Source: Octopus sinensis (taxonomy: Eukaryota). From it: a stretch of 64,000 bases of DNA. Shown in pieces: positions 1 through 27,179 of the stretch. The position numbers and the translations under genes are program-made. Where the stretch lies: assembly GCF_006345805.1 (NCBI RefSeq), contig NC_043016.1:30380001-30444000 (forward strand), given 5' to 3'. The notes beneath the pieces were generated by a model that worked only from the letters and a program-made list of their open reading frames with translations, ran no database searches and was not told the DNA's origin. Numbering within the stretch: the first letter of the stretch is position 1; each line of letters opens with the position of its first letter.

Positions 1-767
1 ACAAAATAAAAGTTATGGAAAAAGAAAAATCAATATTTCTCTATTTTACATCAACTTGGAGCAGCAGAGAAGCAAATAGCAAAAGAATGAAAAAAAAAAG
101 TAACATAAGGGAGAGCAATATGGAACAGGAACATTAGATTAATATTGGAACTGATCAATATAGATCAGATCAATATGTTAGTCTTTCATATGCTACGCTT
201 TTGTACATTACTAATATGTGATACAGTTCTGTGTTCTACCTTATTCTGTTCTCTGCTACCATTCTATATGATTGTTCTATGTTACTGTTTTATAACTGCT
301 CTATTCTATATTGATCTAGAAAAGTAATGCAGACCGATAATAAAAACCATATTAATATAAAACAAAACAACATCGAACAGAATGCTGCAGAAGAGCAACA
401 TAGAGCAGAGAAACATACAATAGTAACACAGGTAATCATCATCATTGCTATCATCATTTTAATGTCCATGTTTCAATGCATGCATACGCTGGACAATGTT
501 TACTGAGGTAGATTTTTCTATGGGCCAGGAGCCTTTCCTGTCACCTACCCTCACAGGTTTCCAAGTAAGACAATATTTTCACTTTGGCCAGACATGCTTA
601 CGCAGAATACCAGAAATAAATGACACTGCTTGCATGACAGAGACACTCATTTACAACTAAAACATGATGTCAAAACTAGGGGATGCACACACACACTTGC
701 ATGTGTGTATGTGTGTGTGAGAGAGTGCATGGCTTAATGGTTAGGCTGTTGCACTCAAGATTGCAAG

Positions 768-2108: not shown

Positions 2109-2592
2109 GAGCTGAGCAGCTCTCCAGCTGGCCAGTACCTATCAAGCCATCCAACCCATGCGAGCATGGAAAATGGATGTTAAATGAGGATGAAAATGAT
2201 GAATCGTCAAAAATACAATATCAGATATGGTCTGGAGTTCACCATAGTAACAGTGGCCAGCAAAGCCAACCCTACTTTGAACAATAACAGTAGTGATTTA
2301 AGATAATTTTGTTGTTATTTCTAGTAGGTTGAGCAACCATACAGAGACTCCATTGCTAGAATGGAACCTAAGTTCAAGAACTCAGTTCAAAGGAAGGTGA
2401 GTGTGATTCCATAATGTCTACATATTGTTAATGTAAGGGATTAATGTTTATAAAATACTCAATTAAACAATTAACTTTCCATTCGTTAAAGTTTCAGTTT
2501 AATGAATATCATTTTTAAAATTGGAAAATGTCACCTTTTGAGAATTTTTAAGAACTAAGAAATGTTAAAGTTGTTTTTTTTTTATAACTTAC

Positions 2593-2782
2593 GCTGAAGA
2601 AGCTTCATAAACTTGTCTATAGACGTGTGGAATTTGGTCATCATCCAAATAACACCATGAAGGAAGTGTCTGGAATGGTCCCATTGGATACTGAGAAACT
2701 GTTGGTGTTGTACTTCCACTATCTGGTGTTGTACACTGAGGTTGCATGTTGGAACTAACATCTGGTGTTACAGGTGGCTGAT
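2593..2782 (-). CDS. SYNRG: Synergin gamma exon leading into the EH domain (LPSWCYLDDDQIPHVYRQVYEASS)
   Basis: Acceptor ttttacttgtatttgcag, donor GC|gtaagt; 190 nt, phase 1 to 2. Matches human MPPWIYNESLVPDAYKKILE (recalled). Later exons lie beyond the window start. Confidence 0.92.
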
Positions 2783-3026
2783 CTGCAAATACAAGTAAAA
2801 ACTAACAAAATGAAACATTTAACTGAATAATTTATATGAAATTTTAACCAAAGAAGGTAATTTCAATTAAACTTTCTTCATTTAACAATATCAGAATTAT
2901 AAAACCATGATATGGGGAGAAAAAACAGAAAAATTTTCCAAACTTGAAATCAGTTTAAACCTGCATAAAAAAAAAAACAAACCAAACCACAAAAAATATA
3001 AATTGAGAAAAATAACCATGACCTAC

Positions 3027-3224
3027 CTTCTACTTTAAAGAGGCCTGACAAACTTTCATCGCCGTCTTGCCACTTACGAGATCGCTCACTGCTTGTATAT
3101 GAGGCACTCCTCGAGGTTGTAACATTGGTTAGGTTTGTTTCCCTCAAAGTCTTTTTGTTCTGGAATGTTTTGGCTTTCTGAGAAACATTTAGGTCAGAAT
3201 ACTGTAACATCATCGCCATTAAAT
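3027..3224 (-). CDS. SYNRG: Synergin gamma exon (DLMAMMLQYSDLNVSQKAK...LFKVE)
   Basis: Acceptor tttttcag, donor AAG|gtaggt; 198 nt, phase 1 to 1, no stops. Confidence 0.88.
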
Positions 3225-3639
3225 CTGAAAAATTAATCAGCAAAATTATTGTGAGTATTTGTTTGTGAGTATTTTGAGTTCATCATTATTAATATGACTG
3301 ATAATGTGGCAAGCTGGCAAAATTGTTAGAAAACTGGAAAAAATCCTTAGTGATATCCATCCCAGGTCTTTTACATTCCAAGTTCAAATCCCAGGCGAGA
3401 TAAGCTTCGCATTTCATTCCTCAGGGATCAATAAAATAAAGTACCAGTCAAATACTGACATTATTGCAATCAACAATTAACTTCCCCTTCCCCTCAAGAG
3501 TGCTGGCTTTGTACAAACATTTGAAACCATTATTATTACAATCCATATTAATACTGTGGCTGAATGAATTTTTGCTAAAAACTCTTTCCAGAGTTATCTC
3601 CAAATGCAACTGAATCTTTCAGGAGTAAAAACCGAATTT

Positions 3640-3832
3640 CTTCTTCTTCCATGCAGTGCCACATAAAAGCAGGTGTACCGTACCATGTAAAAGCACCCAG
3701 CACACACTGTAAAGTGGCTGGCTTTTGGAAGGGCAAATCAGAAAGGAGTCTGGTGCATCCCACCAGCTTGCCAGCTCTGATCACACCATCGAACCCATGC
3801 CAGCATGGACAACACACGTTAAATGATGATGA
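3640..3832 (+). mobile_element. RTE 3'-tail fragment; similar copies at about 2110-2200, 5250-5510, 20440-20820, 26070-26270, 30410-30480(-), 30790-30960(-), 59030-59200, 59960-60130, 60370-60980
   Basis: Shared AAAAGCACC...CCAACCCATGCCAGCATGGA...GTTAAATGATGATG motif. Confidence 0.8.
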
Positions 3833-4686
3833 ACTGAGCCTTTCAGTTTCCACCCGCAAAATCTAAAATCTACTCAGAGGGCTTTGGTTGGACTGAAACT
3901 ATATCGGCAGACACTTGTCCAAGGTGCCACACAGTGAGACTGAACCCAAATAATTTCTAATGAGTAGTGCTGCAGATAACTTAGTCAAGATATTACATAA
4001 TTCAGCAACCAACTGCATTTAAAATGAATTCAAATCAGACTGGAGCCATTTTACTTATACTTGGCATTTGGAAAGGATAAGTACTAGTAATATACTAGGG
4101 CTATAAGTGAAATAAAGTAGACAGACACTGTATAGGAGCCCATCAGGTGGATCACATACACCAAGTAACACCAATTGGTGCCCATTGGCATGTGATATAC
4201 ATCTTTAAGGGCGATTACTTTAAGTTAGTTTTTAGTTTCTTTACATTGCAAAACTCACAGCTGCCAAACTTGTGTGATCTATATGCATATTTTAAATATT
4301 ATATTGTTTATTCATGATTTCTTATTTACTTAGATATAAATGGTTTTATTATTATTAAAATAATAAGAATTTTGAAAAAATCCATTTATAATGCTATGTA
4401 CTAAAGTATTTATTGTAAAAAGTCTTTAGCCAACAACTTGAGGGTTTTTAGAGATTGAAAAGTAAACTAAAAAGTAACCTAAAGTAATCGTCCTTTAAGT
4501 TGTAGATCACACGTCTACTACCTAATAATTACGTCAAGGATACACATGGAATGCTCAGCCAATTAAATGATAATTCAAGGGCAGATAATTCAGTTACTGG
4601 AACAACTGAATCCTTATCAAACAACAGAAATCCACACATTCTTTTAATAATGCATCAATAAAACAATGCTGTTCTACTGTTTTTAC

Positions 4687-4854
4687 CTTTGGTTTCTTCT
4701 TCTTCTTCTTCATTGGCAGGGGGAGGAGCTTTAGCTGGATTATTTTCTGATGAAGATGAAGAAAAGCCTAAAGAACCCATCCAAGATTTCTCAGACTGTT
4801 CAGAACTTGGTCCTTGCATAAAGTCTCCAAAACTATCAGGATCACTGTCAATTG
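4687..4854 (-). CDS. SYNRG: Synergin gamma exon with gamma-adaptin-ear binding motif (DSDPDSFGDFMQG)
   Basis: Acceptor ttttatttcag, donor AAG|gtaaaa; 168 nt, phase 1 to 1. The acidic FGDF motif is typical of AP-1 accessory proteins. Confidence 0.9.
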
Positions 4855-6393
4855 CTGAAATAAAATAAAATAAAATAAAACTACAAGAAAAGGGTTCATT
4901 AAGGTGAAAATAGATACTAAGGTTGATAACATTAATTACTGCAGCTACTTTTATCATCAACATCATTACTAATAATTCTTTCTAATTTTTTTATTGACCC
5001 CTGAAAGCCAAGCTGCAGTTAGAACTCAGAGTGCAGAGAATTGAAACAAATACTGTTAAGCAGTTTGCATGATGTTCTAACAACTTTGCCAATTAACCAT
5101 GTATGTTATCATCATTTTAATATGCACTTTTCTACGCATACTTGGATTGTAGGACAACCTGCTGTGCTTACATTGGATTGTAGGGCGACCTGCTGTGCTT
5201 GAGGAGACCTATAGAGTCAAGTACATCAACATCAAAATAAAAATCAAATGGAAATTGCAGTTGTGATACCCATGCCAGTGGCATGTAAAAAGCACCATCC
5301 GAATGTGGCCAGTGCCAGCACTGCCTTGACTGGCTTCTGTGCCGGTAGCATGTAAAAAGCAGCCACTACACTCACGGAGTGGTTAGCATTAGGAAGGGCA
5401 TTCCAGCTGTAGAAACACTGCCTCCTGGCTTCCCAGACCCCAGTCAAACCGTCCAACCCATGCTAGCATGGAAAATGGACAATAAATGATGATGATGATG
5501 ATGATGACATGCATCACATATTTAGTTTATTGAGGTAGATCTGCTACAGCAGGATACCCTTCCTGTCACCAACCCTCACCTACAAATGAGGAAATATTTC
5601 CCCCATAGCCAGGCATGTTTATACAGCATATCAGAAAAGAACAACACAACATGTATGATAGTGACACTCGTTTACAACTATCATGTGGGTTATCAAGACA
5701 AGCAGACTCAAAGATATACATATAGTTACATATCATCACACCCATCATAGATCCAACAGGTTTCTTTCAGTTTCCATCTAACAAATCCATTTACTAAGCT
5801 TTAGTCAGCCTTAGACTAGAGTAGAAAACGTGCTTAAGGTGCCACTTGGTGGGGACCAAACTCAAAACCATATGGCTGGGAAGCAAACTAACCCATAAAA
5901 CCATGCCTACACACACACACGACAAGCTTCTTTCAGTTTCTGTCTCTCAAATCCTGTCACAAAGCTTTTGGTAAACCTTGGACTATAGTAGAAGATACTT
6001 GCCCAAAATGCCATGCAGGGATACTGAACCTGGAACCATGTGGTTGGGAAGCACGCTTCTTACCATACAGTTATGCCTGCACCTATGAAACTATGCTTGT
6101 ACCTATAATTAGGTACAATACAGTAAATTGTTCCTAACACTAACAAGGTAAACTCAAACTTGGAATGTATTATTATCTGCAAGAAATAATCCAAACAAGA
6201 TATGACAGCAATAAAATACAAATGTAGCTGTCACAAGGAAAGGAAAACATACTAGAGTTTCAAAACTGAAGCCTTTATCAATAAAGAACCTATCACTGTT
6301 ATTCCTTTCCTCAATGCAGCTACAATTTCATAGCATTTACTATATCAGTATCTCTAACAGAAGGCAGTGAAATGTACAGAGGAATCTACAAAC

Positions 6394-6686
6394 CTGTTGT
6401 CGTTGTCGTATTAGTAGTTGTAACAGTTTGAGATGTTTGTGGAATGTGAACTTTAGGTTTTGATTTTGGAACTTTACCAAACATGGACTCAATCATGCGA
6501 TCGGGATCAGAAGATACCACGCCTAATCGACCAAATAGTTTCAGTTTCATTTGTTGTTCGTGAAAATGCTTCCCTTTTCTTTGGTCTTCAACAATGTGAG
6601 CATTGACAGGAACACCAGCTATCATTTGACCAGGGACTACACCGTGGACAATACCAGGAACCATTGTTGCATGAAACTGTTGGTTG
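6394..6686 (-). CDS. SYNRG: Synergin gamma exon with coiled-coil segment (IVEDQRKGKHFHEQQMKLKLFG)
   Basis: Acceptor ttatttgtcatcag, donor CAG|gtttgt; 293 nt, phase 2 to 1. Resembles human SYNRG LLEEERKRRQFEEQKQKLRLL (recalled). Confidence 0.9.
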
Positions 6687-8338
6687 CTGATGACAAATAA
6701 AAATATATAAATAAATAAAATGTTAAAAATAAAATGTACTACTAAATTTTTTCACCAATATTACCAATAAATCTAATTCTTCTACGACACCAAAAAAAAA
6801 CACAAAAAATCTGAGCATGAGTCACATGAGTAATATTCTTTCCAATTTTAGCACAAGGCCATCAATTTTGAGAAGAGACAATCAATTGACCCCAGTGCTC
6901 AATTGGTACTTCATTTTTTGATTCCGAAAGAATCAAACTCTGCAGAACTTGAGCTCAGAATGTAAAGATCAAATAAATGCCACAAAGCATTTTGTCCAGT
7001 ATTTTGACAATTCAGCTAGCATACCAACTTAATAATAATAATGACAATAAGAATAATTATTTCTACACTAGGCACAAGGCCTTGAAAATTTTGGGGGGAA
7101 GTGGGATAATCGATTACATCTACCCCAGTGTGTAACTGGTACTTGTTTCATTGAACCCGAAAGGATGTAAGGCAAAGTCAACATCTGCAGAATTTGAACT
7201 CAAAACGTAGCAGCAGATGAAATGCCAGTAAGTATTTTGCCCGTTGTACTAATGATTCTGCCACCTTGCTACCTTAATAATAATAATAATTACTGCCCAT
7301 GTGTTTTAATTTAACCTTAAAAAAAAAAAAAAATGAACGAACTATTGAGTTTGGTTTAATGGCCTACCAATGTATACTATGAGTTTCTTTGCCCTAGGAG
7401 TCGGGAAGACGCTCGGCAAGAAATGGAAGCAAATTTGAAAGAAGAAGAAAAAAAAACAATAATAATAATAATGGTTTCAAATTTTACCACAAGAGCAGCC
7501 ATTTTAGGGGAGCGGATAAGTTGATTACATCAATTCCAGTGCTCAACTGGTAATTATTTTATTGACCCCCAAAAAGGCAAGGTCAACCACAGTGGAATTT
7601 GAACTCAGAACATAAAGACAGGCAAAATGCCACTAAGCATTATGCCCGGTGTGCTAACAATTCTGCCAGCTTGCTGCCTTAATAATGATAATTTCTTTTT
7701 ATTTATGCGCCCTTTTCAAGCCTAGCCAGGCTCATGGGCCCAGTTTCTCGGTTTCTATGACGTATTTATTCCCCACAGTGTCACTCAAGAAACAGGAAGA
7801 AAGAGTGAGAGAAAGGTGGGGCAAAAGAGTATAACAGGGGTCACCACCACCCCCTGCCAGAACCTCATGGAGCTTTAGGTGTTTTCGCTTAATAAACACA
7901 CACAATGCCCAGTCCGGGAATCAAAACTGTGATCCTTCGACCTTGAGTCCACTGCCCTAACCACTGGGCCATTGCGCCTCCACTTAATGATGATGATAAT
8001 AATAATAAATAATCTCTTGTACAATAGACACAAGATTTGAAATTTTGAGGGTGAGTGCTTGTTGGTTGCATTGATCCCAGTGCTCAGCTGGTACTTATTA
8101 ATGCAAAAGGATGAAAGACAAAGTTGACCACAGTGGAATTTGACTTAACCTTTCATCCTTTCAAGGATTTAGTTTAACAATGAAAGTATTAATTAATTGA
8201 TTAAATCCCTTTGAGATTTGATTATTGTTTTCAAACCACAGACAAAGTGTTTCATTAGAAGCAAATTCATGCAAGGGTTAAATTTAAAAAAAAAAAAAAA
8301 AATTTAATTAAAATTAAAAAATGTAATGGAAAACTTAC

Positions 8339-8454
8339 GCTTGTTGAGCATGGAAACTCTGAGCCATTTGTGGTGTGTATGGTGGCGGAGGAGGAATGTT
8401 GCCAGCGCTCATCATCGTAGTAGGGATAGCCATAGGTGTGGCTATGTATGTTCC
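8339..8454 (-). CDS. SYNRG: Synergin gamma exon (GTYIATPMAIPTTMMSAGNIPPPPPYTPQMAQSFHAQQA)
   Basis: Acceptor tcttgtaaactatag, donor GC|gtaagt; 116 nt, phase 0 to 2. PPPYTPQM recalls the PGPQYTPDM segment of human SYNRG. Confidence 0.88.
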
Positions 8455-8629
8455 CTATAGTTTACAAGATAAAATTCTGATAAACACTAAAACAAAGGTA
8501 AGAGCATAAAAAAACTTCCTACATGTGTTTATGTGTTACATAATGCATCGTTGTTTGCTTGGAAAATATATCAGATGATGTAATTTTTCTGATAAGATTA
8601 GATGTTGTGATTATAAAATATTATATGTA

Positions 8630-9050
8630 ATTTCTCAGGCAATACTGCATGTTGAGATTTCTGAGGTACTACTATGTTTAGATTTCTCTTGTAATACTAC
8701 ATGTCATTTCTCTGTACAGTATGTGAATTCTATGGTGATGTATGTGCTTTCTATGGAATATTATGTGCAGTTTTTCTGGTAGAGCCACTTGTTGGGAGTT
8801 GTCTGATAACACTACATGTTGAAATTTCTTTGGTAATACTACATGTAGGTATTTCTAAAGTCATGCTACATGTGATTTCCATCGGAATTCTGCCAGTTGT
8901 TTCTCTTCTAATACATGTAGTGATTTCACTGGTAACACCATGTTATTTCTGGTGATAACTACATGTTATATTTCTGTGGAATTACTACATTTGAGTTATC
9001 CAGTCATACTACATGTGATTTCTATGGTAATAATGCATGATGCGATATCT
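8630..9050. repeat. Degenerate tandem array with a roughly 25-27-bp unit in a SYNRG intron
   Basis: Recurring (TAA)TACTACATGT..ATTTCT motif. Confidence 0.7.
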
Positions 9051-10588
9051 CCGACTTAGAATAGTCAAAATCATTAACAATCCATTCTAACTATTATAAT
9101 TATTAAAAAGCCATTCTGATACAACAGTGTGTCATCCGCAATAATTCTTATAATTGAAAAATATTTCTCTACTGCTTGTGGTAATTGTGGAATTTGCTGT
9201 ATTAACTTTTTAACTAATTAATCTGTGAAACAATGAAGTATGACATTTGCTAAAATAGAAAATATCTCTCTTACTGTAGGAGACAAAATTAATAGAAGTG
9301 AGGGGTATTCTCTTTAACAATGATTGTTAATTACCTACAGTAAATAACTTGTCTACATTTCTAGCAATAAATGACAGAAGATTTAGAGGATAAATACTCT
9401 GGACATGTAACTTGATCCCCTAGCATTTAAACTGATTGACTATATCCAGCCCAAATATTCTACCTGTTTTAGCTTTAAACTGTCCAAATCCGGCCTCTTA
9501 CACCTACTCTACAATGTCATTCTAAAAATAAACAATTACATCATCAAAATCTCAAAACTGAGATAATGCTTCATTCATTCAAAACAATGTGAATAAATAA
9601 GTATTACATTTGAGAGCAGAGTAATTTGAATGTTGAAGTGTTAAGCCAGCCATATCTAGCCCAAATATTATACCTTTTTTTATGTTCAAACTGGCTAGAA
9701 CCAGCCCCTCATACCTACCCTACAATGTCATTCTAAAAATAAACAATCACATCATTAAAATCTCAAAGCTATGAAAAATAATGTATGATTAATTCAAAAC
9801 AATGTGAATAATTAAACATTACATTTGACAGAGTAATCTGAATGCTAAAGGGTCAAAACAATGATAAATTTGAATGATAAAGGGTCAAGATATTTAAATA
9901 AGAAGCTGAAGAATGATTAGAAGTATTTTACAATTATTTCCCCCCACAGAAAAAAAAAAAAAGAACACATTTTTGTATTTATATGAATTTGATATAAAAT
10001 ATTTAAAACAAATTACATCTTTAAAAGAGGAAAAGGAGGGAAGTAACATGAATGGAAACAAAATTTGGAAGCAAAAAAAATAAATAATAAAAAAACAAGG
10101 ACAAGAAGGGAACAATGAATTGTAAACATAAAAGGGTATCACAGGGGCCTTGGAAAAACATGTCATTCAAAAATTAGTGATACTACTACTGATAATAATA
10201 ATGGTCTCCAATTTTGGCACTTCGTCAGCAATTACAGAGGGAATAAGTTGATTATATCAAATCCCAGTGTTCAAGCAGTACTTATTTTATCAACCCTGAA
10301 AGGATGAAAGGCAAAGTTGACCTTGGTGGAATTTGAACTCAGAACGTGAAGTCAGAAGAAATGTCGCTAAGTGTTTTGTCTAGCATACTCTTTTACTTGT
10401 TTCAGTCATTTGACTGTGGCCATGCTAGAACACCGCCTTTAGTTGAGCAAATCGACCCCAGGACTTATTCTTTGTAAGCCTAGTACTTATGCTATCAGTT
10501 TCTTTTGCCGAACCACTAAGTGACGGGCACATAAACACACCAGCATCGGTTGTCAAGTGATGTTGGAGGGACAAACACAGACACAGAT

Positions 10589-10639
<51 letters not shown>

Positions 10640-11530
10640 TATACGACGGGCTTCTTTCAGTTTCCGTCTACCAAATCCACTCACAAGCCTTTGGTCGACC
10701 TGAGGCCAAAAGTGACACACAGTGGGACGGAACCCGGAACCATGTGGTTGGTAAGCAAGCTACTTACCACACAGCTACTCCTGCATCTCATGCTAACAAT
10801 TCTACAAGATTGCTACCTTAGTATATATTAATGGTGCCTTAAATTCAATAGCTTTTTATTTATTTTTTTATCGTCAATAATTACACCACAGTTACATCTC
10901 ATTGTAAATTATTTAATTATTTATCATCAAATATTTTAATATCTGATTCAGTGGATTTTACTCTCATATTACAGACCCATATTTTTGTTTTTTTTATTTT
11001 GTTTCCCAATGAAACTTTTTTGAGGTAAGTTCATTTTATTATATTTGTTCATTTTTTATCATTTATTTGTTTGTCATTAGACTGTGGCCAAGCTGGAGTA
11101 CTGTCATGAAGAATTTTTAGTCGGATGTATTGACCTAAGTATTTATTTTTGCTTAACCGCTAAGTTATAGGAACATAGACAAACCAACACCAGTTGCCAA
11201 GCAGTGTTGGGGGACAAACACAGAGACACACACACATACATATATGGTAGGCTTCTTTTAATTTCCATCTACCAGATTAGATTCACTCATAAAGCTTTGG
11301 TTGACTCAAGGCTATAGTAGAAGATACTCACTCAAGGTGCCATGCAGTGGGACTGAACCCAGAACCGGTGGTTGGGAAAAGTTCTTACTACACAGCTATT
11401 CATTAAAATTTTAAATACAGGAAGAATATGGATAAAAAGTGACAGGGATTATTAATTAAGTGTAAAATCAACCAAAGGAGGAATAAAATGGTAAGCAGAA
11501 GAAAAAAAAAACCAAACATAGATGAAATAC

Positions 11531-11566
11531 CTCTTCATTATCACTAGAATCATGAGCGTCATCAGA
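11531..11566 (-). CDS. SYNRG: Candidate 36-nt cassette exon (SDDAHDSSDNEE)
   Basis: tttattccttcatctaacag|TCTGATGAC...GAAGAG|gtattt; phase 0 to 0 in the same phase-0 intron. No homology support. Confidence 0.3.
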
Positions 11567-11990
11567 CTGTTAGATGAAGGAATAAAGAAATTTTATTTCA
11601 AATCAATTATTTACAATTGTGTTTCCAGAATCATAAAAGAAGACCCCTTAAGAAATTGTTATATTTTCAGAAAGAGAGAAAAAAAATACATACATATTTA
11701 AGATTATCTTTCTTGCTATCATCATCATCATCATCATCAATACTTTACTATCAATATGTTCATTCTGTTATTGTTTGAACAGGTCAGCAGGACAATCGAT
11801 TTTTTTTTTCCCCAAAAAAAAATTTTCATCTCAACCGATTGAGTTTGTTATTGATTAAGTTTGTTCAGCTGAATGTTCAAAAAATCTAATCCATCTCATA
11901 CAGATCCATTTAATTCATATATTTTTCCTGTCACCAACTTAGAATGCATCTATCATCAGTATGTGTCATCTATTCACAACACAATGCATG

Positions 11991-12022
<32 letters not shown>

Positions 12023-12649
12023 ACATCATGTGCATGTGTGTGATTGCCCTGAACTCTCAACACCTGATGACATGTGGCATGTTTTGGGTGTATAAATTTG
12101 GTATGATCTCATGCCTTTCCCAATCTAATTGCCACCAATTCTTTCTCAAGAGAGATAAGAATAGAGAAATGTCTTTCATGTTTCCAAACATGATAATATT
12201 TCCCCATGACTGGACATGCTTTCTGGGAAAACTAAAAAAAAAAAACATTGTATGATGACGACACACATTTACAACTGTCATACATTGTCAAGACAATGAG
12301 TCACACACACACACACACTCAGACAAGCTTTTTTCAGCTTTTCTACATGAAATCCCGTCACAAGGCTTTGATTGGCCTGGAGCTATGGTAGAAGACATTT
12401 GTCTAAGGTGCAGCCATAGAGTGGGACTGAACCTGGCACCATGTGATTGCGAAACAAACTTTGTAACCATACAGCCATGACTATCCTTAATCACTGGTAA
12501 AAGTAGCACATAATATGGCAACTATTATTACTTGAAGTGAGGTAAAGTAATGGGCTCAAAAGTAAATTTCCCATCTAGAAATTACATTCAAGCATAGTTC
12601 ACTCGAACCATATGAGGTCATATTAAATATCTTGTTTGTTCAACCTTAC

Positions 12650-12670
12650 CATTTGAAGAATTCCTTTTAC
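12650..12670 (-). CDS. SYNRG: Candidate 21-nt in-frame microexon (VKGILQM)
   Basis: ccatttcTGCtattacag|GTAAAAGGAATTCTTCAAATG|gtaagg; phase 0 to 0 inside a phase-0 intron; leaves a 95-nt upstream intron. Confidence 0.55.
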
Positions 12671-12765
12671 CTGTAATAGCAGAAATGGCTTGATAAGAAT
12701 CCACAGGACAGACAAATTAAAGACAAAAATATATATATATATATATATACTTAATGATTGTTTAC

Positions 12766-12914
12766 CTGGACAGGGTATATACCCTGGGCTATCATTGGAT
12801 TTCCAGCCAACATTCCAGGAGCCATCATTCCATATTGAGCACTACTGGCAGGAACAGGATAAAACTGGGCAGCCGCTGCAGATGCTGCGGGAGGCCCCTG
12901 TAGTGGATTAAACC
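12766..12914 (-). CDS. SYNRG: Synergin gamma exon (G/P/A/Q/M-rich N-terminus: FNPLQGPPAASAAAAQFYPVP...IYPVQ)
   Basis: Acceptor ctttcttcctttttag, donor CAG|gtaaac; 149 nt, phase 1 to 0; open frame continues into the next exon. Confidence 0.85.
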
Positions 12915-14711
12915 CTAAAAAGGAAGAGAGAGTGAAAAAAGTAACAAAATAAGGATTTTGAGTTTTAGAGATCACCCAGAATAAAATACTCCCTTCGCTA
13001 TCAATGTTGTCATTACTACTACTACCATCACCCCAGCCACTGCTACTTGTGCAGAGAGTTATGAAAAACAGGCAACTCTAATAAAGAGGGTGAAGTGTAA
13101 CTTGTATAGGTTATATTTTATGCTTTAATCTAATAGTATACTAAAATAATCCTTCAAGATTTATTTCATACTTTTACTTGGTTTTCTTATCTGCTTTACA
13201 AGATTCTTTATGTGAATTTGTGCGTTGAAGCAAATTTTGTTGTGTCTGGGAAGTCATACTGCCTTAATGTCGATCACCAGTTCAATTTCCATCTATTGTT
13301 CATATCTTTTTTTTCTTCCAAAATTTTCATTGCTTTTGCAACCTTGTCAATGGATGTTTACTGTCTGTTATTGGAGCTGGATTCCTTTTGTCTGTTTGCG
13401 CATGCATGTGCACCAGTGTGCATGTGTACTTGAGTATGCATATACGTGTGTATGCATGTTTGTATGTATGCATATGTGTAAGTTTGTATGTATTCTGCAT
13501 GTTCATGTGTGTGTGTGTGTGTGTGTGCATGCTTGTGTGCAAGTGCGTGTATTTGTGTGTGTACCTCTGTCTCCTTGTGCGCGTGTGCTTAAGTGTGTCT
13601 ATGTGCATGAATTTGTGTGACTATGTACAAGTGTACATACATATATGCATAGACAAGCACACATACACACTGATGCACAAAAAGACAACAGGAACACAGC
13701 TCCAATAATGGACAGAGTCAACATCTATTGACAAGTTTGCAAAAGCAACAAAAATTTAGGAAGAAAAGAAAATAATAAACGAATGGAAATTGAAGTGGTG
13801 TGTTAGTAAGGCAGTATGACTCTCCCCCAGACACAACAAAATTCATACTTTTAGTTTTCTTGAAATTACTTGCGATATTAAAATTAATGAGCTTAATTGA
13901 TACTTTTAAAAACATTAAATCTAAAAGTATTAAAATAAAAACAAAGCACAGACCTGTTTGCATTTGGGAGAAATCCACATTTCTGAAAATAATAAGAAAA
14001 AAAATGGTAAAATAAAATTAAACTTGGTCATGTAAAATGAGATACAATTAATTAACATTAATGGTATATCAAAAAATAGTACAGTTGTGATTTCATCATT
14101 GATAATTATTAAAAACTATTTTTTTTACATAAACTGTGTATCCCTACAATCAATTACTTATCCACCACCCAACAATTAGGTACCACTACTTTTTATCATG
14201 CCTGTTTGCTTGATTGATCTGTTAGCTGCAGGACTTCACTCTGATCAATCAGAAAGTAACAAAGTTAAGAAATCCAAAGCTCCTTTTGGTAAAGATTTTT
14301 CTAAACAAAATAATTCATCTTTCTTGATGCCACTTAAAATATTTTTGATTCTGTTTTTGGTGGATTATATAATATAATTTACCCCAAATTGCTATAATAC
14401 TAAGTAATACAAAAATCTATTCACACACATAAAGAAATACACTTCCACGAACACAAGAACAAAGCAATATAATATTCTTTATTTTCTTTCTTTTTTTTAT
14501 TCGTTTCAGTCATTTTGACTGTGGCCATGCTGGAGCTCCGTTTTTAGTCGAGCAAATCAACCCCAGGACTTATTTTCTGTAAGCCTAGTTCTTATCCTAT
14601 CAGTGTCTTATGCCGAACCACTAAGTAACGGGGACGTAAACACACCAGCATCGATGTCAAGCAATGTTGGGACACACACACACACACAAACATATACACG
14701 CATATACATAC

Positions 14712-14742
<31 letters not shown>

Positions 14743-15169
14743 CACACATACATATATACGATGGGCTTCTTTCAGTTTCTGTCTATCAAATTCACTCACA
14801 AGGCTTTGGTTGGCCCGAGGCTATAGTAGAAGACACTTGCCTAAAGTCCCAAACAGTGGGACTGAACCTGGAACCATGTGGTTGGTAAGCAAGCTACTTA
14901 CTACACAGCCATGTGTTATTCTGAGAACATGTTATAAGAAAAAGACAAAAATGTATAGTAACCTTTTTCTCCCCTTACTAACTCAAAAAATGTGGAAAAT
15001 ATATTGAAAGAATTATCTTAGATTTAACACCACCCTCCTTTCTTTTTTGTTTTTCTGTTCAGTCTGGAGGAAGAGGTGAAGGTTTGCAAAGCAAATTTAT
15101 TTAACCATTCTGCTATCATGAGGATATTGGTTCAATCCTAGTGTGGGTAAATGTGATCTTCTGCAGCCA

Positions 15170-15777
15170 TTAGCTAGTGGGTTTCAACCAGGGTCCACAT
15201 GGCCCTTGTGGGTCCATGTAAGAATCTCCGGTTAAACTTTTTGAGCAATAAATTGGTTATAGTTCTACAATACACAAAATATTTCAACAATTGTTTTTTC
15301 TATACAAATCCTAATAATAGGTTAAAGGTAAAGACATCCACCGGTCATGAATGACCAAAGGATTGCATCTAGAAAGTTACCCTCTGAGGCACAAGTCTGG
15401 ACAAGGTTGTTTATGGGAGACCAGCAGTCACCCATGCATACCAGCCTCCCCTTTTTATGCCACCAATATTATCCAAAGGAAAGGCAAAGTCTGATACAGC
15501 TTGGCACCAGTGACATCACAACTCATTTCTACAGATGAGTGAACTGGAGCAACATGAAATAAAGTGTCTTGCTCAAGAACACAACACACAACCCAGTCTG
15601 GGAATAGAACTCACTACCTCATGATTGTGAGCCCGATACCCAAACAACTGAGCCAACGCCTTCACTTCTGTTCCTAATAATATTTAATTATAAAAATATA
15701 ATGGAACTTTTCTAAACATTGAATATCTATAGGAATTAAAGGGGTCCAGAGGTAGAAAAATGGTTGAGAACCACTGA
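15170..15777. mobile_element. Degenerate hAT MITE with a nested SINE (about 15346-15665, -)
   Basis: Ends TAGTGGGTTTCAACC / GGTTGAGAACCACTG. A related left end at about 61387 is interrupted by a SINE. Confidence 0.6.
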
Positions 15778-16626
15778 GTGAAAATGGGTTCGTGCCTATA
15801 GCCTTAGCAGACCTTCCAAAACCAGTGTTCCTGAATTGAAATACAAGTGGTTGAGTATTTTATACAAGTGTAATATAAAAAGGATAAAGTTCCTTTCCAA
15901 GTCATATACATTTATAGGGCTGGTTTCCAAATTCACTGTGTATATATTCTCTTTTCCCTGGACAAGACAAGATGCTGGACTGTTGCAGGATTACTCATTT
16001 TTGCCAGTTGCGATGACTGGAACAACAGGAAATGAAGTGTTTTGCTCAGGAACACAACACATCACTTGGACCAGGAATCAAAACCACAATCTTATGATCA
16101 CGAGTTCAACACTCTAACCGCTAAGCCACATGCCTCCACAGACACATGTGCCCTCAATGGAATTCTCAGGCAGAATCAGTATGACACAGCGTGTGAGAAG
16201 GCTGTATCTTTTTAAATTACAAGAACAAACCATCCAACAGGCTTCCTGTACAGTTTCCATGTGCCCAATTTCATTCACAAAGCCTTTGGGTCAACCTGTG
16301 GTTATTGAAAATTACATTCGCCCATGATTCCACATCCAGTGGAATTGAATCTGAAATCTCAGTTGCAAAACAAATTTATTGACCATTTGGCCATTTTGGT
16401 TTAATGGTCCTCTTGAACAGTTGCAAACTAATAATAATTATATCATAATTTCTGGCAATAAGACAGCATATTCTTCAAGAGTTTACTCAAGGGATATAAA
16501 AACGCCAGAAACAGTCAAAATGTGTGCGTTTATCAATACATTATTGATAATACATACACTCTGTCCATGTTGAATTATCAACTTCCAATGCAATAGTAGT
16601 TTTTCTTTCTCATTCAGCTTAAACTT

Positions 16627-16856
16627 TTAACCCTTCAGCATTTAAACCTGCCATATCTGACCCAAATATTCTGCCTGTTTTATGTTCAAACTAGTTAGAA
16701 CTAGCCTCTTACATTTATCCTACAATGTCATTCTAAAAATAAACAATCACATCATTGAAATCTCAAAACTATAAGATAGAATGCATGATTAATTCAAAAC
16801 AATGTGAATAAAGAAGCATTACATTTGACAAAATAATGTGAATGCTAAAGGGTTAA
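16627..16856. mobile_element. piggyBac-type MITE; copies also at about 9410-9860 (tandem pair), 24745-24966, 61158-61385
   Basis: TTAA|CCCTT(C/T)AGCATT ... AATGCTAAAGGG|TTAA. Confidence 0.8.
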
Positions 16857-18299
16857 GCATATATTTATCATCACCACTACCACCACCACCATCATCATCA
16901 TCATCAATAATAATCCTTTCTATTACAGACACAAGGCCTGAAATTTTGGGGGAGGGGCTAGTCAATTACACTGACCCCAGTGCATAGCTGGTACTTATTT
17001 CATCGACCCAGAAAGGATCAAAGGCAAGTTGACCTCGGCAGAATTTGAACTCAAAATATAAAGATGGATGAAATGTCACTTTAACAGTTTGCCTGGTTGA
17101 ATGAGTTCGCTGCCTTATCATCAATAATAATGGTTTCAAATTTTGGCACAAGAACAGCAACTTCAGGGGAGTGGGTAAGTCGATTACATTGACCCCCAAC
17201 ATTTCATTGGAACTTATTTTATCAACCCCAAAAGGATGAAAGGCAAAGTCGACCTCAGCGGAATTTGAACTCAGAACACGAAGATGGACAAAACACCACA
17301 AAGCATTTTGCCAGGCATGCTAACGATTCTGCCAGCTCGCTGCTTTAATCAATAATAATAACAACAAAAAAGCATTTTAAAACACCTGTCTGAACCATAA
17401 ATATGGATTAAATAATTTATACTGAAATATATCAATACAAGTCCTTTACTACTTTCAATTATTGAAATATGGCTAAGCTAGAGTACCACTTTAAATTATA
17501 TTGAGCCCTGTTGCTTGTAGACAGATACTATTTTATCAATTCCAAAAACACTCTTGTTTGCCCTATGCAAGCATAGAAAAGCAGACATTAAAACAATGAC
17601 AAGGATGATGATGATGATATGCTGTGCTACATGAATATTCATTGTTCTTTTTTACCAACTATAGAGTTTGTTCAAGCTATGTTAGGATCAATAAGTGTTA
17701 ACAGGTTATCTGTATATATGTTCCATCCACCATATCAAAAAAATAAGCATACTACTTAGGCATTGATAAAGAAATCTAGAACAAATTAGTGATCTACATC
17801 TCTAAGCACAATAAAATTGTTAATCTATTTATAAGTTCTGTTTTAGAGTAACAGCTGGCCATGTTGATTACATGGCAACAGTCTCTCATTGTCTCTCACC
17901 CATATAACACTTTACCACCAGGGTCATCTAATTGTTTACAACCCCACCCATAAAAATTTCTCACTGTGTACCAAGTGTAGAAACAATTATTTTTTATCAA
18001 AAAGAATGAAGGACTGGCAAAATACAGTAGTTAACAATGTCCCTTTATTTTCAGAATTCCAATCATACTTAGGTCAACTTTGCTTGTGGCTTTGTGCCTA
18101 CACCAATAATAACAACAAGAACACCCAGAGAGTGCAAACCTCCACCAAGGCAACACCAACATCCTCTCAACGATTAGCTGGAGATGATTTTTAAAATGAG
18201 AATATCTGAAATAAACTCGACTGCTCTCACAAATGAGAATACTAAAAATGAACCCAAACGCTTTAAAAAATTAAGTAAAATAAACTGGTAGACATGGAA

Positions 18300-18600
18300 T
18301 GTGAAGGTGGGTGTATGGGTTGAGCTTGTAATGCTGTATGTGTAATGCTGTATGTCGTCTGCAGTGGGAACAGGGACAGTTTTCTCTATGAAGGCCTTTT
18401 CTAGTCTATCCACTAATATAATATCTTTATGACCATTAAGGTCTATAGTGAAAAATTTATCCATACATGAAAGAAAACGGAAAGGACCTGCATACGGTGC
18501 TGTTAACAGAGGTTTAACAACATCATTGTACACAAAAATGTGAGTCCAAGAAGTAAAGCTTCCTTCAAGGCAGAGCTAGAAATGCAATTGTCAAGTAGGT
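18300..18600 (-). mobile_element. Ty3/Gypsy integrase C-terminal (GPY/F) fragment
   Basis: THIFVYNDVVKPLLTAPYAGPFRFLSCMDKFFTIDLNGHKDIILVDRLEKAF. Confidence 0.8.
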
Positions 18601-18949
18601 AAGAAGTTATAAACAGGAGCAATATATTCAAAATTGGTAAAACTAAAAATTGTCAAGGATAAATTAAATTTATTATTGTTACTGAATGTTATTTAATTTC
18701 TGAACAGTTTTGCTGTTGTTTGTTTATGCAGTTTGATTTCAGGATTTCTTTATCAATCAGTTTCTACTAAGATAGAGACGCGAGTAAAATTAATAATAGA
18801 GAAACGAAAATAAATCTTTAGAAACGGCAACACCATCATAACTTACATGGAAACCATGAGCGTACTTTAAAGGGAAATAATCAGTGAAAGACTTGAAAGT
18901 CAACATAAGATTGTAATACTTCATGTATAGTAAAATAAATATAACAAAT

Positions 18950-19135
18950 AATCCAGAATCCTTGTCCTGTACTGGATTGATCCCAAAATCTAATCAGTCC
19001 GTGTCAGTCACGAGGCCAAACATCCCTGAAAGTTTCATCTCAATCCATCAAGTGGTTCTTGAGATATCTTGTCCACAGACAAACAAACATGACTGAAAAT
19101 AATACCTCTACCATCACTAAGGTGGAGGTAATAAT
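18950..19135 (-). mobile_element. Non-autonomous 'ATTACCTCC..GGAGGT' element (Helentron-associated or Crypton-like; class uncertain)
   Basis: Minus: ATTACCTCCACC..GTAGAGGTATTATTTTC..GTTTGTTTGTCTGTGGACAAGATATCTCAAGAACC..GATGAAACTTTCAGG. Confidence 0.4.
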
Positions 19136-21165
19136 GATAAATACAACCCTCTTAAATATGAGATAGGTTGATTACAGAAAATGAAAGAGGTGAAGACAGT
19201 GCTAATTATTGTTGGGTCCTTGGGAACTATCACTCAATATGATTTCTTGATGTCACATAATTAGAAACTAGAAACAATTTCCTGTTGTTTAAACCATCAA
19301 ATAAACAATCTCTATTGCAGATCTCATCACACTCCTCTCATTGTCTAGTAATAAAAATACCCTTTCTACTACGGGCACAAGGCCTGAAATTTTTGGGGAG
19401 GGGACTCATCAATTACATTGACCCCAGTACATAACTGGTACTTATTTCATCGACTTCCCCACAAAAGGATGAAACAATTCTGCCAGCTCACTGCCTTAAT
19501 AATATTAATAATAATAATCCTTTCTACTAAAGGTAGAAGGCCTGAAATTTGGTGGGAGGGAACTAGTCAATTACATTGACCCTAGTGTTTCACTGGTACT
19601 TAATCTATTGACCCCAAATGAATGAAAGGCAAAGTCAACCTCGGTGGAATTTGAATTCAGAATGTGAAGATGGTCAAAATGCAGCTAAGCATTTCACCCA
19701 GTGTGCTAACGATTCTGCCAGCTCAACACCTTAATAATAATAATAATCAGTGCTACTGCTAAGCATCCCTTCCTACTTTATTTTCAACTGAACACTTTTT
19801 TCTCCTGAACTACATTTTATGAATCATACCTCATCTATAACACCCTCTCATATTTGCCATTGTCCCCATCACCACCACAACTTTGTCACTTATTACATAA
19901 CTCTGACCTTTGTATCAAATGCTAATTTTTCATCCCTCTATGGGTTTAGTTATACTGCTGCTCCCCAACTTTTATGTACTTCCACCTATCACCTCCTCCT
20001 CCCTAACCCCAATGCTGTCACCTTCATCTCCCCAAAACTGATATTTACAATCACCCACATTCTTGCCTTGGTTCTACATTCAGTACATTGACCTCTACCT
20101 TGCTCTCCAACCATCTGTCACTGTCCTTTCACATTCTTATGAACTTAACTACCCTCCCTTCCTAATACTCTGTCTTTATTCTTATTTATATCCACCTTCT
20201 TGTACCATGAGACTGTGCTCTGACACCCCATCACCATAGTCGCTGTTTCCTTTTCAGCTACTCCCACTTACCCTTATATAATGTGAGGTTACCATGCATC
20301 TCCTCTGTAGCAAAATATCTGTACCTGTCCATATTCATACTTTTACCTCTCAACAACTGGCACTAAACTACATTCTCTCTCAATCAAGGAGATTTTTTGT
20401 CTTCTGACTTATTTGGTAACCTCACTAGTGCTGGTGCTACAAAAAATGCACCCAGTATATTCCATTGAGTGGCTGGTGTTAGGAAGGGCATACAGCTGTA
20501 GAAAACAGACATTGGCCACCATGTATCTCCTTTGTAGCAAGCCACCTGCACCAATCCATAATCATATTTTCACCTCTCAACACCAGACACAAAACCACTT
20601 CAATACTATACCCTAATTCAGTGAAGGGGCCTTGTGTTGTACATTATATGCTGACCTCACTAGTACTGCTGCTACAAAAAAGCACCCAGCACACTCTCTG
20701 TAAAGTGGTTGGTGTTAGGAAGAGCATCCAGCTGTAGAAAACAGGCATTAGAGTTCAATAGTTTTCCAGCTCAAATCCTGCCAAATCATCTAACCTATGT
20801 CAGCATGGATGTTATCTGATGAACATGGTCTTCAGAGCCTTCCTTTCACAGTAGTTAAGCCAACCTCATTAAGCTGGGTGAGGAAGAGACACATTGACTG
20901 CCAAAACAAACTACAAGTAAATAATGAAGAAAGCTAACCCAAATGAAAATCCAATCTATAAAAAAATCTTTTTTTTTTCAATTAAGCTCAGAAAAATAAA
21001 TTGTTGCTGTACTTGCTGCATTCATCACTATAAAAATAGTGTGAAATTACAGAAATAAAGGCAAAGGTTAAATTGTTGTGGTTTTAAGTGAAACTATCAA
21101 AATGAAACAAATGAGGAGTAAACGTGTGTGTGTGTGTGTGTGTGTGATACTTCATATGCATATGC

Positions 21166-21219
<54 letters not shown>

Positions 21220-22129
21220 TGTGTATGAACAGTAATACATAGCAATACAATTATGTATATAAACCTGTATGTGTGTGAGAGAGAAAGAAGAGAACATCTA
21301 TGCATATTTCATGTACATAGGAAAAGGGAGGGTTAGGGTTAGGATACATGTCCACATGGTTTTTTTTTTTTTTTTGTAAAAGAATGTGATTGCAGACATA
21401 TGTGTTTTGCTGAATTACCTCAGCATCAATGCATGTGCGATGAGCTTTTAAAGGAGTGGTGGGTGGAATAAAGAAAACATCAAAGAGTGAGGAAAAAAGC
21501 CCAAAACAAGTGGGTAGGTACACTGAGGCAGGAAGAGAGAGAACAATTCAAGAATGACAAAGCATACCTACTTTCTCTCTCTCTCTTACACACACACACA
21601 GAGTACATATAGCAAAGAAATTATGAACATCAGCATGATGATGATTTCATTTAAAATAGTTTTTTTCTTTTTTGAGACAACATAGAACAATGACCTTTTC
21701 TTTATACAAAGAGAAACCAGAATAGTAGTCTTTATAAAAAAAAAGACAAAATAGTAGCCAAATTTCTCTGAAATTGCACTTTATCAACTTAAGTAAAGAT
21801 CACATTAAAATAATATAGTCCTATTACATTGTTCAGTGGGGTGGTCACTGCTGGAAGACTTGACAGATGGCCTAGAGCTAAACAGCAATGACAGTTTCTC
21901 TTGTTGCTTTCAGCTACAGGTTGTGGCCATGCTGGAGCACTACCATTGTAGTCACTTTTATTTATCAGTTCTCAATCATAGATATTAAAGAGAGTTTAAC
22001 ACTTTTGTCACCATATTTCTGCTGAGATACTCTGTCTTTGCTTCAATTAATTTTGAACATAATGAAGAATTTACTAAAATAGCTTTGTCATAATTAATTA
22101 GTGTTTGGATCATAAATTAACACTAAGTT

Positions 22130-22628
22130 CTGATAGAAGATTTCGGCATAAAGAAGTTCTGAGCTCTAATTGTAGAGGGTACCTGAGGAAGGGTAGAACC
22201 AGGCAGATGTGGGCTGAAATGATGAGAAAGGATCTTTGGATGCTGGGCCTCACTGAGGAAATGATAAGGGACCGGGAGATGTGGAAATTTGCTGTACATG
22301 ATAAGACATATCAAGCTAAGCAAAATTACTGTCTTCCACATGTACAAGCTTGTCCTTTCAGGTGCTGGTGCCACTTAAGAAGTGCCCATGCTGGTGCTGC
22401 GTTAATGCACCTCTGCTGGTGCTGCATAGACACACCCGTAACAGTGTCACATAAAAAACAGCCAGCACACTCTCTTAAGGGGTCGGTGTTAGGAAGGCCA
22501 TCCGGCCATAGAAACCATGAAACAACAGACAGTTGGAGTCTAGGCAGCTCCCTGCTAACCAGCTATGTTAAACCATCCAACCCACGCCAGCATGGAGAGC
22601 AGATGTCAAATGATGATGATGATGACTC
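22130..22628 (+). mobile_element. RTE LINE 3' fragment (same family as 768-2108)
   Basis: GYLRKGRTRQMWAEMMRKDLWMLGLTEEMIRDREMW plus the same 3' UTR motifs and (GAT)n tail. Confidence 0.8.

Positions 22629-27147: not shown

Positions 27148-27179
<32 letters not shown>

What the first reader, a model, noticed from the sequence alone, without database searches (positions are those of the whole stretch)
12650..12670. Candidate 21-nt neural-type microexon in synergin gamma with an upstream UGC motif
Seen: near-consensus donor (ATG|GTAAGG), acceptor TTACAG, symmetric phase 0, no stop (VKGILQM), and a TGC about 10 nt upstream of the AG within the pyrimidine tract. Established: eMIC/SRRM4-dependent neural microexons carry UGC at this position and are enriched in vesicle-trafficking genes. 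Inference: this is a neural-regulated microexon in a cephalopod AP-1 accessory protein that gene predictors would likely miss.
Basis: partly seen in the sequence, partly recalled or inferred. Interest (0 to 1): 0.72.

Follow-up and report, generated by a model that had tools for sequence, protein, structure and literature searches.

The report
Annotated 21-nt octopus synergin microexon
The 21-base segment is a real alternative mini-exon of the Octopus sinensis synergin gamma gene, but public gene models already include it, it was not detected in the one other octopod genus whose DNA could be read, and its supposed nerve-specific use is still untested.

Summary
On the minus strand, 12670-12650 (GTAAAAGGAATTCTTCAAATG = VKGILQM) lies 95 nt downstream of an exon that ends in phase 0. 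It has acceptor ctattacag|, donor ATG|gtaagg, no stop codon, and a TGC at -11..-9.

The window is 100% identical to the Octopus sinensis synergin gamma locus (GCA_006345805.1, CM016878.1). RefSeq isoforms X1, X3, X4, X5 and X6 contain VKGILQM at exactly this junction. X2 equals X1 minus those 7 residues. Three O. vulgaris models include the exon and four skip it.

So the exon is real, alternative and already annotated. The claim that predictors would miss it is refuted.

Neural or eMIC regulation could not be tested.
- The UGC is weak evidence, because 11-35% of AGs in this window have one nearby.
- The 3' splice site is compact and strong, with a 16-nt AG-exclusion zone. That is unlike typical SRRM4-type microexons.

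I found no orthologue in the same intron of Argonauta hians. A second mini-exon in that intron (11566-11531, 36 nt, acidic) is conserved there with its splice sites. It is annotated in O. bimaculoides but is in none of the O. sinensis or O. vulgaris models retrieved.

The parts
12650..12670 (-). The 21-nt cassette microexon, GTAAAAGGAATTCTTCAAATG = VKGILQM, phase 0-0
   Evidence: It is the only place in the 69-kb O. sinensis locus that encodes VKGILQM (L002:22468 = window 12670). It is present in XP_036367516.1 and others, and absent from XP_036367517.1.
12644..12649 (-). 5' splice site of the microexon, ATG|gtaagg. Positions -1..+5 match the U1 consensus.
   Evidence: PWM 5.24, the second-highest donor score among the exons of this gene in the window.
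12671..12765 (-). Upstream 95-nt intron. It holds (TA)n at about 12749-12729, yUnAy motifs with A at 12717 and 12694, an AG at 12690-12689, a UGC at 12681-12679 and the acceptor AG at 12672-12671.
   Evidence: In O. vulgaris it is one TA unit shorter with one substitution.
12766..12914 (-). Upstream constitutive exon E2 (…FNPLQGPP…GIYPVQ), donor CAG|gtaaac
   Evidence: Matches all public models.
8339..8454 (-). Downstream exon E3 (GTYIATPMAIP…HAQQ)
11531..11566 (-). Second alternative mini-exon in the same intron, 36 nt, SDDAHDSSDNEE, with acceptor ...catctaacag| and donor GAG|gtattt
   Evidence: candidate list. O. bimaculoides XP_014768319.1 and XP_052829451.1 carry SDDAHDSGDDEE at this junction. 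The exon and its flanks align to A. hians L001:42104-42151 with conserved AG, GT and reading frame.
13954..13982 (-). 29-nt exon E1b (…NVDFSQMQT…). It holds the ATG used as the start in isoform X5.
33992..34137 (-). Alternative first coding exons: MPCKVYLHAPRISK at 34137-34094 and MINNTR at 34008-33992
2593..6686 (-). Downstream exons E4 6686-6394, E5 4854-4687 (DSFGDF motif), E6 3224-3027 and E7 2782-2593 (start of the EH domain)
   Evidence: Identical to the public O. sinensis and O. vulgaris proteins.

Best explanation
Window 12670-12650 (minus strand) is a genuine 21-nt, phase-0 cassette exon of the Octopus sinensis synergin gamma gene, and it is already annotated.

Inclusion inserts VKGILQM between ...GIYPVQ and GTYIATP... 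in the N-terminal Met/Pro/Gln-rich low-complexity region. That site is about 80 residues before the conserved EDQRKGKHFHEQQMKLKLFG stretch and well before the EH domain. Skipping joins 12766 directly to 8454.

Shown:
- The exon and both junctions are in public models.
- Isoform pairs differ by exactly these 7 residues.
- The DNA is single copy in the window and not repeat-derived.
- The exon and its splice sites are identical in O. vulgaris.
- No detectable counterpart exists in the same intron of Argonauta hians.

Inferred:
- Recognition probably goes by intron definition across the 95-nt upstream intron. The likely branch site is CUUAU, with its A at -24. The proximal tract is 82% pyrimidine, and a strong 5' splice site follows.
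- The exon is probably evolutionarily young, or was lost in Argonauta.
- The insert could tune the self-association or partner binding of a prion-like low-complexity region.

The tissue pattern is unknown. I put neural enrichment at roughly 0.35-0.4 and eMIC dependence lower.
For: - Sequence anatomy.
- Source: the window equals the O. sinensis locus L002 at 100% identity over 35 kb.
- Uniqueness: VKGILQM is encoded once in that locus, at the candidate's position.
- O. sinensis models: RefSeq X1, X3, X4, X5 and X6 include it and X2 skips it. X1 minus VKGILQM equals X2 exactly.
- O. vulgaris models: CAI9734479, CAI9734485 and CAI9734482 include it. CAI9734480, CAI9734481, CAI9734483 and CAI9734484 skip it. 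Two include/skip pairs differ only by these 7 residues.
- Gene identity: the sources' names plus precomputed Pfam PF12763 (EH) and PF25999 (SYNRG_C).
- Repeats: the exon is single copy, while the nearby SINE-like repeat and (TA)n are separate from it.
- Splice-site strength and rarity.
- Context: human synergin gamma is a top-ranking Met-rich prion-like-domain protein (PMC9312190). eIF4G microexons in prion-like domains alter phase separation (PMC10551640).
Against: - RefSeq XP_ and ENA models are computed annotations. I could not see the transcript reads behind them, so inclusion level and tissue are unknown.
- The exon is absent from the single A. hians model and from both O. bimaculoides models. 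No orthologous sequence was found in the A. hians intron, so there is no evidence of long-term selective constraint.
- Comparable splice-site decoys occur on the antisense strand. Sequence features alone would therefore not prove use.
Confidence: 0.85

Rival explanations
1. This is a neural-specific microexon whose inclusion depends on the eMIC domain of the octopus SRRM2/3/4 orthologue binding the UGC at -11..-9. It would be skipped outside neurons.
For: - It is a 21-nt, in-frame, alternative exon.
- A UGC sits between a candidate branch site and the AG. UGC is found there in 74-79% of SRRM3/4-dependent human microexons (10.1101/2024.09.17.613571).
- The 5' splice site is strong.
- In Drosophila, eMIC exons have short flanking introns and are spliced by intron definition (PMC8797185).
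- Neural exons recur in the same gene families across bilaterians (10.64898/2026.09.05.749416).
Against: - No expression data were available.
- The UGC base rate here is 11-35%, and 2 of 6 constitutive neighbours have one.
- The 3' splice site is strong and compact, not weak. Its PWM score is second of 7 exons. Pyrimidines peak at -15..-5. The nearest yUnAy is at -24. The AG-exclusion zone is only 16 nt. There is no UCUC or CUC and no GCAUG within 300 nt downstream. This contrasts with the features described.
- It is not conserved in Argonauta, whereas neural microexons are typically the most conserved class.
- Five of six RefSeq isoforms include it.
Confidence: 0.3
2. This is a broadly included exon, the default form in most tissues, with minor or tissue-independent skipping. 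It would have no dedicated neural regulator.
For: - Both splice sites are strong and the 95-nt intron is short, which favours efficient recognition.
- It is included in 5 of 6 O. sinensis isoforms and 3 of 7 informative O. vulgaris isoforms.
Against: - Isoform counts are not abundances.
- Skipped forms are modelled in both species, and the exon is absent from the O. bimaculoides and A. hians models.
Confidence: 0.4
3. This is splicing noise or an annotation artefact. A chance pseudo-exon is used at very low level, and evidence-driven pipelines have propagated it into models.
For: - Decoys of similar PWM quality exist by chance at about 1-3 per 64-kb strand.
- There is no conservation beyond the O. 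sinensis/O. vulgaris pair.
Against: - Two different genome records, a RefSeq one for O. sinensis and an ENA-deposited one for O. vulgaris, both model the exon as included and as skipped.
- One O. vulgaris model (CAI9734486.1) starts at the exon's own ATG.
- It is the best candidate in its intron, P about 0.006.
Confidence: 0.08
4. This is a recursive-splicing site. The acceptor is directly followed by GTAAAA, so ligating E2 to 12670 recreates a 5' splice site (CAG|GTAAAAGG). That site could remove the 21 nt together with the downstream intron, which would make the exon a transient recursive-splicing exon.
For: The regenerated site scores 2.40 on the same PWM, inside the range of real donors of this gene (1.46-5.87).
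Against: - The exon's own donor is much stronger (5.24).
- The exon is retained in most annotated mRNAs.
- From my own knowledge, known recursive sites lie deep in very long introns, not 95 nt into a 4.3-kb intron.
Confidence: 0.05

Closest known systems
SRRM3/SRRM4 (eMIC)-dependent neural microexons of bilaterians
   Same: It is 21 nt, in frame and a cassette. It has a UGC just upstream of the AG, a strong 5' splice site and a short upstream intron as in Drosophila. The host gene is a membrane-trafficking adaptor.
   Different: The 3' splice site is strong and compact. The AG-exclusion zone is short (16 nt). There is no UCUC tract. The branch site is not displaced. No deep conservation was found. 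Neural inclusion and eMIC dependence are untested.
Alternative exons of mammalian SYNRG (gamma-synergin)
   Same: It is the same gene family (EH domain plus SYNRG_C). [quoted passage not shown]
   Different: No orthology between the octopus 21-nt exon and any mammalian exon was shown. The surrounding region is low-complexity and barely alignable: 23% identity over 168 residues to my recalled human sequence.
eIF4G1/eIF4G3 microexons inside prion-like domains
   Same: It is a few-residue insert in a prion-like low-complexity region. Human synergin gamma ranks among the top Met-rich prion-like-domain proteins (PMC9312190).
   Different: The functional effect, a change in phase separation, has been shown for eIF4G1 only. 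Here it is purely an analogy.
Recursive-splicing exons (a 3' splice site juxtaposed to a 5' splice site)
   Same: The motif cag|GTAAAA recreates a usable donor after the first ligation.
   Different: It lies 95 nt from the upstream exon in a 4.3-kb intron, and the exon is retained in annotated mRNAs.

Membership tests
Synergin gamma (SYNRG) gene | The encoded protein has an EH domain and the SYNRG C-terminal domain, and sources name it synergin gamma | tested here: met
   The proteins encoded by this locus (P0013 and others) carry PF12763 and PF25999 and are named synergin gamma. The window is 100% identical to that locus. Pfam on the N-terminal part encoded in the window alone gave nothing.
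Alternative cassette microexon | Length of 27 nt or less (3n), with both inclusion and skipping isoforms | tested here: met
   It is 21 nt. X1 minus VKGILQM equals X2. Two O. vulgaris pairs differ only by it. This rests on computed gene models, not on reads.
eMIC/SRRM4-dependent neural microexon | Higher inclusion in neural than in non-neural tissue | not testable with these tools
   No RNA-seq or tissue-resolved transcript data are reachable.
eMIC/SRRM4-dependent neural microexon | Inclusion depends on SRRM3/4 or the eMIC domain | not testable with these tools
   This needs knock-down or co-expression experiments.
eMIC/SRRM4-dependent neural microexon | A UGC motif between the branch point and the AG | tested here: met
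   TGC at 12681-12679 (-11..-9), downstream of CTTAT (A at -24). Its weight is low because the base rate in this window is 11-35%.
eMIC/SRRM4-dependent neural microexon | A weak 3' splice-site context: branch point and pyrimidine tract displaced upstream, a long AG-exclusion zone and a UCUC-rich tract | tested here: not met
   The acceptor PWM is 5.51, second of 7 exons. Pyrimidine content is 0.82 at -15..-5 against 0.60 at -30..-16. The AG-exclusion zone is 16 nt. There are four UCU, but no CUC or UCUC. The expected features are those.
eMIC/SRRM4-dependent neural microexon | A strong 5' splice site (the vertebrate pattern) | tested here: met
   ATG|GTAAGG scores PWM 5.24. Note that Drosophila eMIC exons have weak 5' splice sites.
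eMIC/SRRM4-dependent neural microexon | High conservation of the exon and its flanking intron across related lineages | tested here: not met
   It is identical in O. vulgaris, but that is uninformative at 98.1% background identity. No orthologue was found in the A. hians intron by blastn, fuzzy pattern or PWM scan, while the neighbouring 36-nt exon is conserved there. O. bimaculoides DNA could not be fetched.
Recursive-splicing exon | A 3' splice site directly followed by a sequence that recreates a 5' splice site, in a long intron, with the exon normally removed | tested here: inconclusive
   The motif is present and the regenerated donor scores PWM 2.40. The intron is short, and the exon is kept in most models.

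The most novel reading that the evidence does not exclude
The 21-nt exon is a recently evolved, eMIC-dependent neural microexon of the Octopus lineage. It sits in the Met-rich prion-like region of synergin gamma. Together with the older, conserved acidic 36-nt exon in the same intron, it would form a small splicing switch that retunes an AP-1/clathrin accessory protein in neurons. That would be an independent cephalopod case of the recurrent evolution of neural exons seen in the same gene family in mammals.
Probability: 0.2. Interest if true: 0.5.

Novelty: already known. Interest (0 to 1): 0.2.

Why it matters
As an exon it adds nothing new, because it is already in the RefSeq and ENA gene models of two Octopus species.

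What remains open is its regulation. If inclusion proved to be neural and eMIC-dependent, it would be a concrete, experimentally tractable example of a young neural microexon in a cephalopod. It would sit in a gene that also carries cell-type-specific brain exons in mammals, which bears on how such programmes are assembled repeatedly in evolution.

The more useful by-product is the 36-nt acidic exon at 11566-11531. It is conserved with its splice sites in Argonauta and annotated in O. bimaculoides, yet it is missing from all the O. sinensis and O. vulgaris models retrieved.

Tried and rejected
1. The search for homologous proteins with my 249-aa spliced model, microexon included, returned nothing. 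Identical proteins are nevertheless in the collection. That was a false negative of the word index, so I nearly concluded that no cephalopod data were available.
The single contiguous exon E4 worked and opened the way.
3. Scans of metagenome and prokaryote genome contigs, with the E2 peptide and with a degenerate microexon pattern, found nothing, as expected.
4. Pfam and PDB searches on the part of the protein encoded in the window gave no identification. A BLASTP against my recalled human SYNRG N-terminus gave E = 2e-6. That is a lead only.
5. RNA folding of 12790-12600 showed no unusual structure (z = 0.10).
6. O. bimaculoides genomic DNA could not be fetched. The gene range is 268 kb, and the older protein is not on record.
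7. Literature searches linking microexons with SYNRG or cephalopods found no paper on this exon. The one preprint with Octopus bimaculoides tissue-specific splicing holds no supplementary tables here.
8. A TE-exonisation origin was rejected. The exon is single copy in the window, whereas the SINE-like repeat at 12300-12492 has at least 13 copies.

Full report
**Observation.** The gene lies on the minus strand. Exon E2 (12914-12766) reads ...AGNPMIAQGIYPVQ and ends in phase 0 at CAG|gtaaac. Ninety-five nucleotides downstream, after ...gccatttctgctattacag, lies GTAAAAGGAATTCTTCAAATG (12670-12650; VKGILQM), followed by gtaagg. The next exon starts at 8454 (GGAACATAC... = GTYIATP) in phase 0.

**Is it more than chance?** I scored splice sites with a rough position weight matrix. 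Its frequencies are recalled from memory, so it is only a yardstick.
- The candidate scores 5.51 (acceptor) and 5.24 (donor), better than most of the six neighbouring real exons.
- Among 98 in-frame, stop-free AG..GT pairs of 30 nt or less in the 4.3-kb E2-E3 intron it is the clear best (sum 10.74, next 7.18). Only 6 of 1000 dinucleotide shuffles of the intron reach it.
- It is the only such pair in the whole window, on either strand, whose two sites both score at least as high as its own. Shuffles give 0.07-0.08 per 64-kb strand.
- After allowing for the whole strand, the probability of so high a sum is 0.18. The antisense strand carries decoys of 11.18, 10.0 and 9.74.

So the sequence alone was suggestive but could not settle the matter. 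The TGC adds little. 11-19% of all AGs here, and 13-36% of pyrimidine-rich ones (PWM >=0 or >=3), have a TGC at -15..-5 or -20..-3. Two of the six constitutive neighbours do as well. The exon itself is single copy in the window. A SINE-like repeat (12300-12492, at least 13 copies) and a (TA)n tract flank it but do not include it.

**What it is.** My first protein search with a spliced model returned nothing. An exhaustive search with the contiguous exon E4 then found a 1475-residue protein 95% identical to it. Using that protein as the query retrieved the octopod synergin gamma models, and I listed their cluster members.

The O. sinensis locus fetched with isoform X1 (L002; GCA_006345805.1, CM016878.1) is 100% identical to window 35137..1. 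The window is therefore Octopus sinensis. The annotated gene runs on the minus strand from about 34137 off the low end of the window. The proteins carry EH (PF12763) and SYNRG_C (PF25999) domains and are named synergin gamma by the sources.

At the E2/E3 junction the models read as follows.
- VKGILQM is present in O. sinensis X1 (XP_036367516.1), X3, X4, X5 and X6, and in O. vulgaris CAI9734479.1, CAI9734485.1 and CAI9734482.1.
- It is absent from O. sinensis X2 (XP_036367517.1) and from O. vulgaris CAI9734480.1, CAI9734481.1, CAI9734483.1 and CAI9734484.1.
- X1 minus VKGILQM equals X2 residue for residue. Two O. vulgaris pairs likewise differ only by these seven residues.
- The heptapeptide is encoded once in the 69-kb locus, at L002:22468, which is window 12670.
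- One O. vulgaris model (CAI9734486.1) starts at the exon's own ATG.

The segment is thus a real alternative cassette exon that is already annotated. The inference that predictors would miss it is wrong.

**Conservation.** O. vulgaris (L003) is 98.1% identical over 4.9 kb. The exon and both splice sites are unchanged, and the upstream intron differs by one TA unit and one substitution. At that divergence this says nothing about constraint.

In Argonauta hians (L001), E2 and E3 are clearly found (39710-39856 and 45255-45368). The 5.4-kb intron between them shows no counterpart of the 21-nt exon by blastn, by short-word blastn with 60-nt flanks, by a fuzzy degenerate pattern, or by the same PWM scan, whose best sum was 4.95. 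A triplet repeat and a SINE-like insert follow E2 there. The A. hians model and both O. bimaculoides models also lack VKGILQM. O. bimaculoides DNA could not be fetched.

The exon is therefore either young, confined to the Octopus lineage, or lost in Argonauta. No outgroup was available to decide between these.

**A second exon.** The only part of the O. sinensis intron that aligns to Argonauta is 11595-11520. It contains a 36-nt open segment (11566-11531, SDDAHDSSDNEE) that had appeared in my candidate list with weak sites.
- Both O. bimaculoides models carry SDDAHDSGDDEE at exactly this junction.
- In Argonauta the orthologous segment is 48 nt (SENENDQLDSNDVEEE), in frame and stop-free.
- The acceptor, the donor and about 25 nt upstream and 13 nt downstream of flanking intron are conserved there.
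- None of the sixteen O. sinensis and O. vulgaris models retrieved contains it.

If anything in this intron has been missed by annotation in this species, it is this exon.

**How it probably works.** This paragraph is inference. A 21-nt exon is too short for comfortable exon definition. Here the upstream intron is only 95 nt, so E2's donor and the microexon's acceptor can be paired by intron definition. A CUUAU branch motif lies at -24, the tract at -15..-5 is 82% pyrimidine, and the exon's donor matches U1 over six consecutive positions. Skipping uses E2's donor with E3's rather weak acceptor. Because the exon begins GTAAAA, ligation of E2 to it recreates a moderate donor (PWM 2.40). That gives a second, recursive route to the skipped product, but I rate it unlikely.

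**Is it a neural eMIC exon?** This cannot be tested here. Three papers describe SRRM3/4-type microexons (PMC8797185; bioRxiv 10.1101/2024.09.17.613571; PMC12871342). The described features are a UGC between branch point and AG, a weak 3' site with branch point and pyrimidine tract pushed upstream, a long AG-exclusion zone, UCUC tracts and, in vertebrates, a strong 5' site.
- The candidate has the UGC and the strong 5' site.
- It also has a strong compact 3' site, a 16-nt AG-exclusion zone, no UCUC, and no GCAUG within 300 nt downstream.
- RNA folding shows nothing unusual.
[quoted passage not shown] Its tables are not held here.

I put neural enrichment at about 0.35-0.4 and eMIC dependence at about 0.3.

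**Possible function.** The insert falls in the Met/Pro/Gln-rich N-terminal region. Human synergin gamma is among the top-ranked Met-rich prion-like-domain proteins (PMC9312190). eIF4G microexons in prion-like domains change phase separation (PMC10551640). By analogy only, VKGILQM, and the acidic 12-residue alternative, might tune self-association or partner binding.

**Verdict.** 'Missed by predictors' is refuted, neural regulation is untested, and conservation beyond the sister species is not seen. The exon is already known in public annotation, so interest is low.

Noticed in passing
window 11531-11566 (minus); L001:42104-42151: A second mini-exon lies in the same intron. It is 36 nt and encodes the acidic SDDAHDSSDNEE. 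It is annotated in both O. bimaculoides models and conserved with its splice sites and flanking intron in Argonauta hians, where it is 48 nt. It is absent from all 16 O. sinensis and O. vulgaris models retrieved, so it is probably an unannotated conserved alternative exon in this species.
   Followed up: partly
window 13954-13982 (minus): A 29-nt exon (…NVDFSQMQT…) is shared by every model that reaches the 5' part of the gene. Its internal ATG is the start codon of isoform X5. The gene therefore has several very small exons in its 5' part.
   Followed up: partly
window 33992-34137 and about 34138-34521 (minus): There are alternative first coding exons (MPCKVYLHAPRISK and MINNTR). Some O. vulgaris models extend the ORF a further 128 residues upstream (MDGTLLKIENG...), which looks like read-through of a 5' UTR rather than real coding sequence.
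   Followed up: no
window 12300-12492 and at least 13 other places (e.g. 14765-14913, 5909-6078, 44105-44267): A SINE-like interspersed repeat, 65-77% identical between copies, is scattered on both strands. One copy sits 160 nt downstream of the microexon.
   Followed up: partly
window 55348-56380 (plus): A run of broken ORFs has translations that look like a Tc1/mariner-type transposase (…DDNTPIHTAKVVTEWH…LIWPLQSSDLNIIEHLW…). It is probably a decayed transposon. No search was done to check this.
   Followed up: no
window 1369-2180 (minus): ORFs here resemble the C-terminal part of a LINE-type reverse transcriptase, inside the intron downstream of E7. This was not checked.
   Followed up: no
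window 32927-33026: A 100-N assembly gap lies inside the roughly 20-kb intron between the first coding exons and the 29-nt exon.
   Followed up: no
window 59459-59842 (minus-frame ORF): There is a tandemly repeated unit of about 90 nt. The ORF repeats ...AFYVPLTQLLVPQHQHWPCCLREAQHLKG... It lies upstream of the gene.
   Followed up: no
window 1508-1525, 9280-9297, 45137-45145 (plus): The antisense strand holds microexon-like decoys whose summed splice-site scores equal or nearly equal the real exon's. This shows how weak splice-site scores alone are as evidence.
   Followed up: yes
O. bimaculoides locus: The current O. bimaculoides synergin gamma model spans 268 kb and encloses three other genes (ATG8-like, GLE1-like and one more). 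Its first exon is probably mis-joined.
   Followed up: no
The word-indexed protein search missed proteins that are 100% identical to a 249-residue low-complexity query. A negative result from that tool on such sequence should not be trusted.
   Followed up: yes
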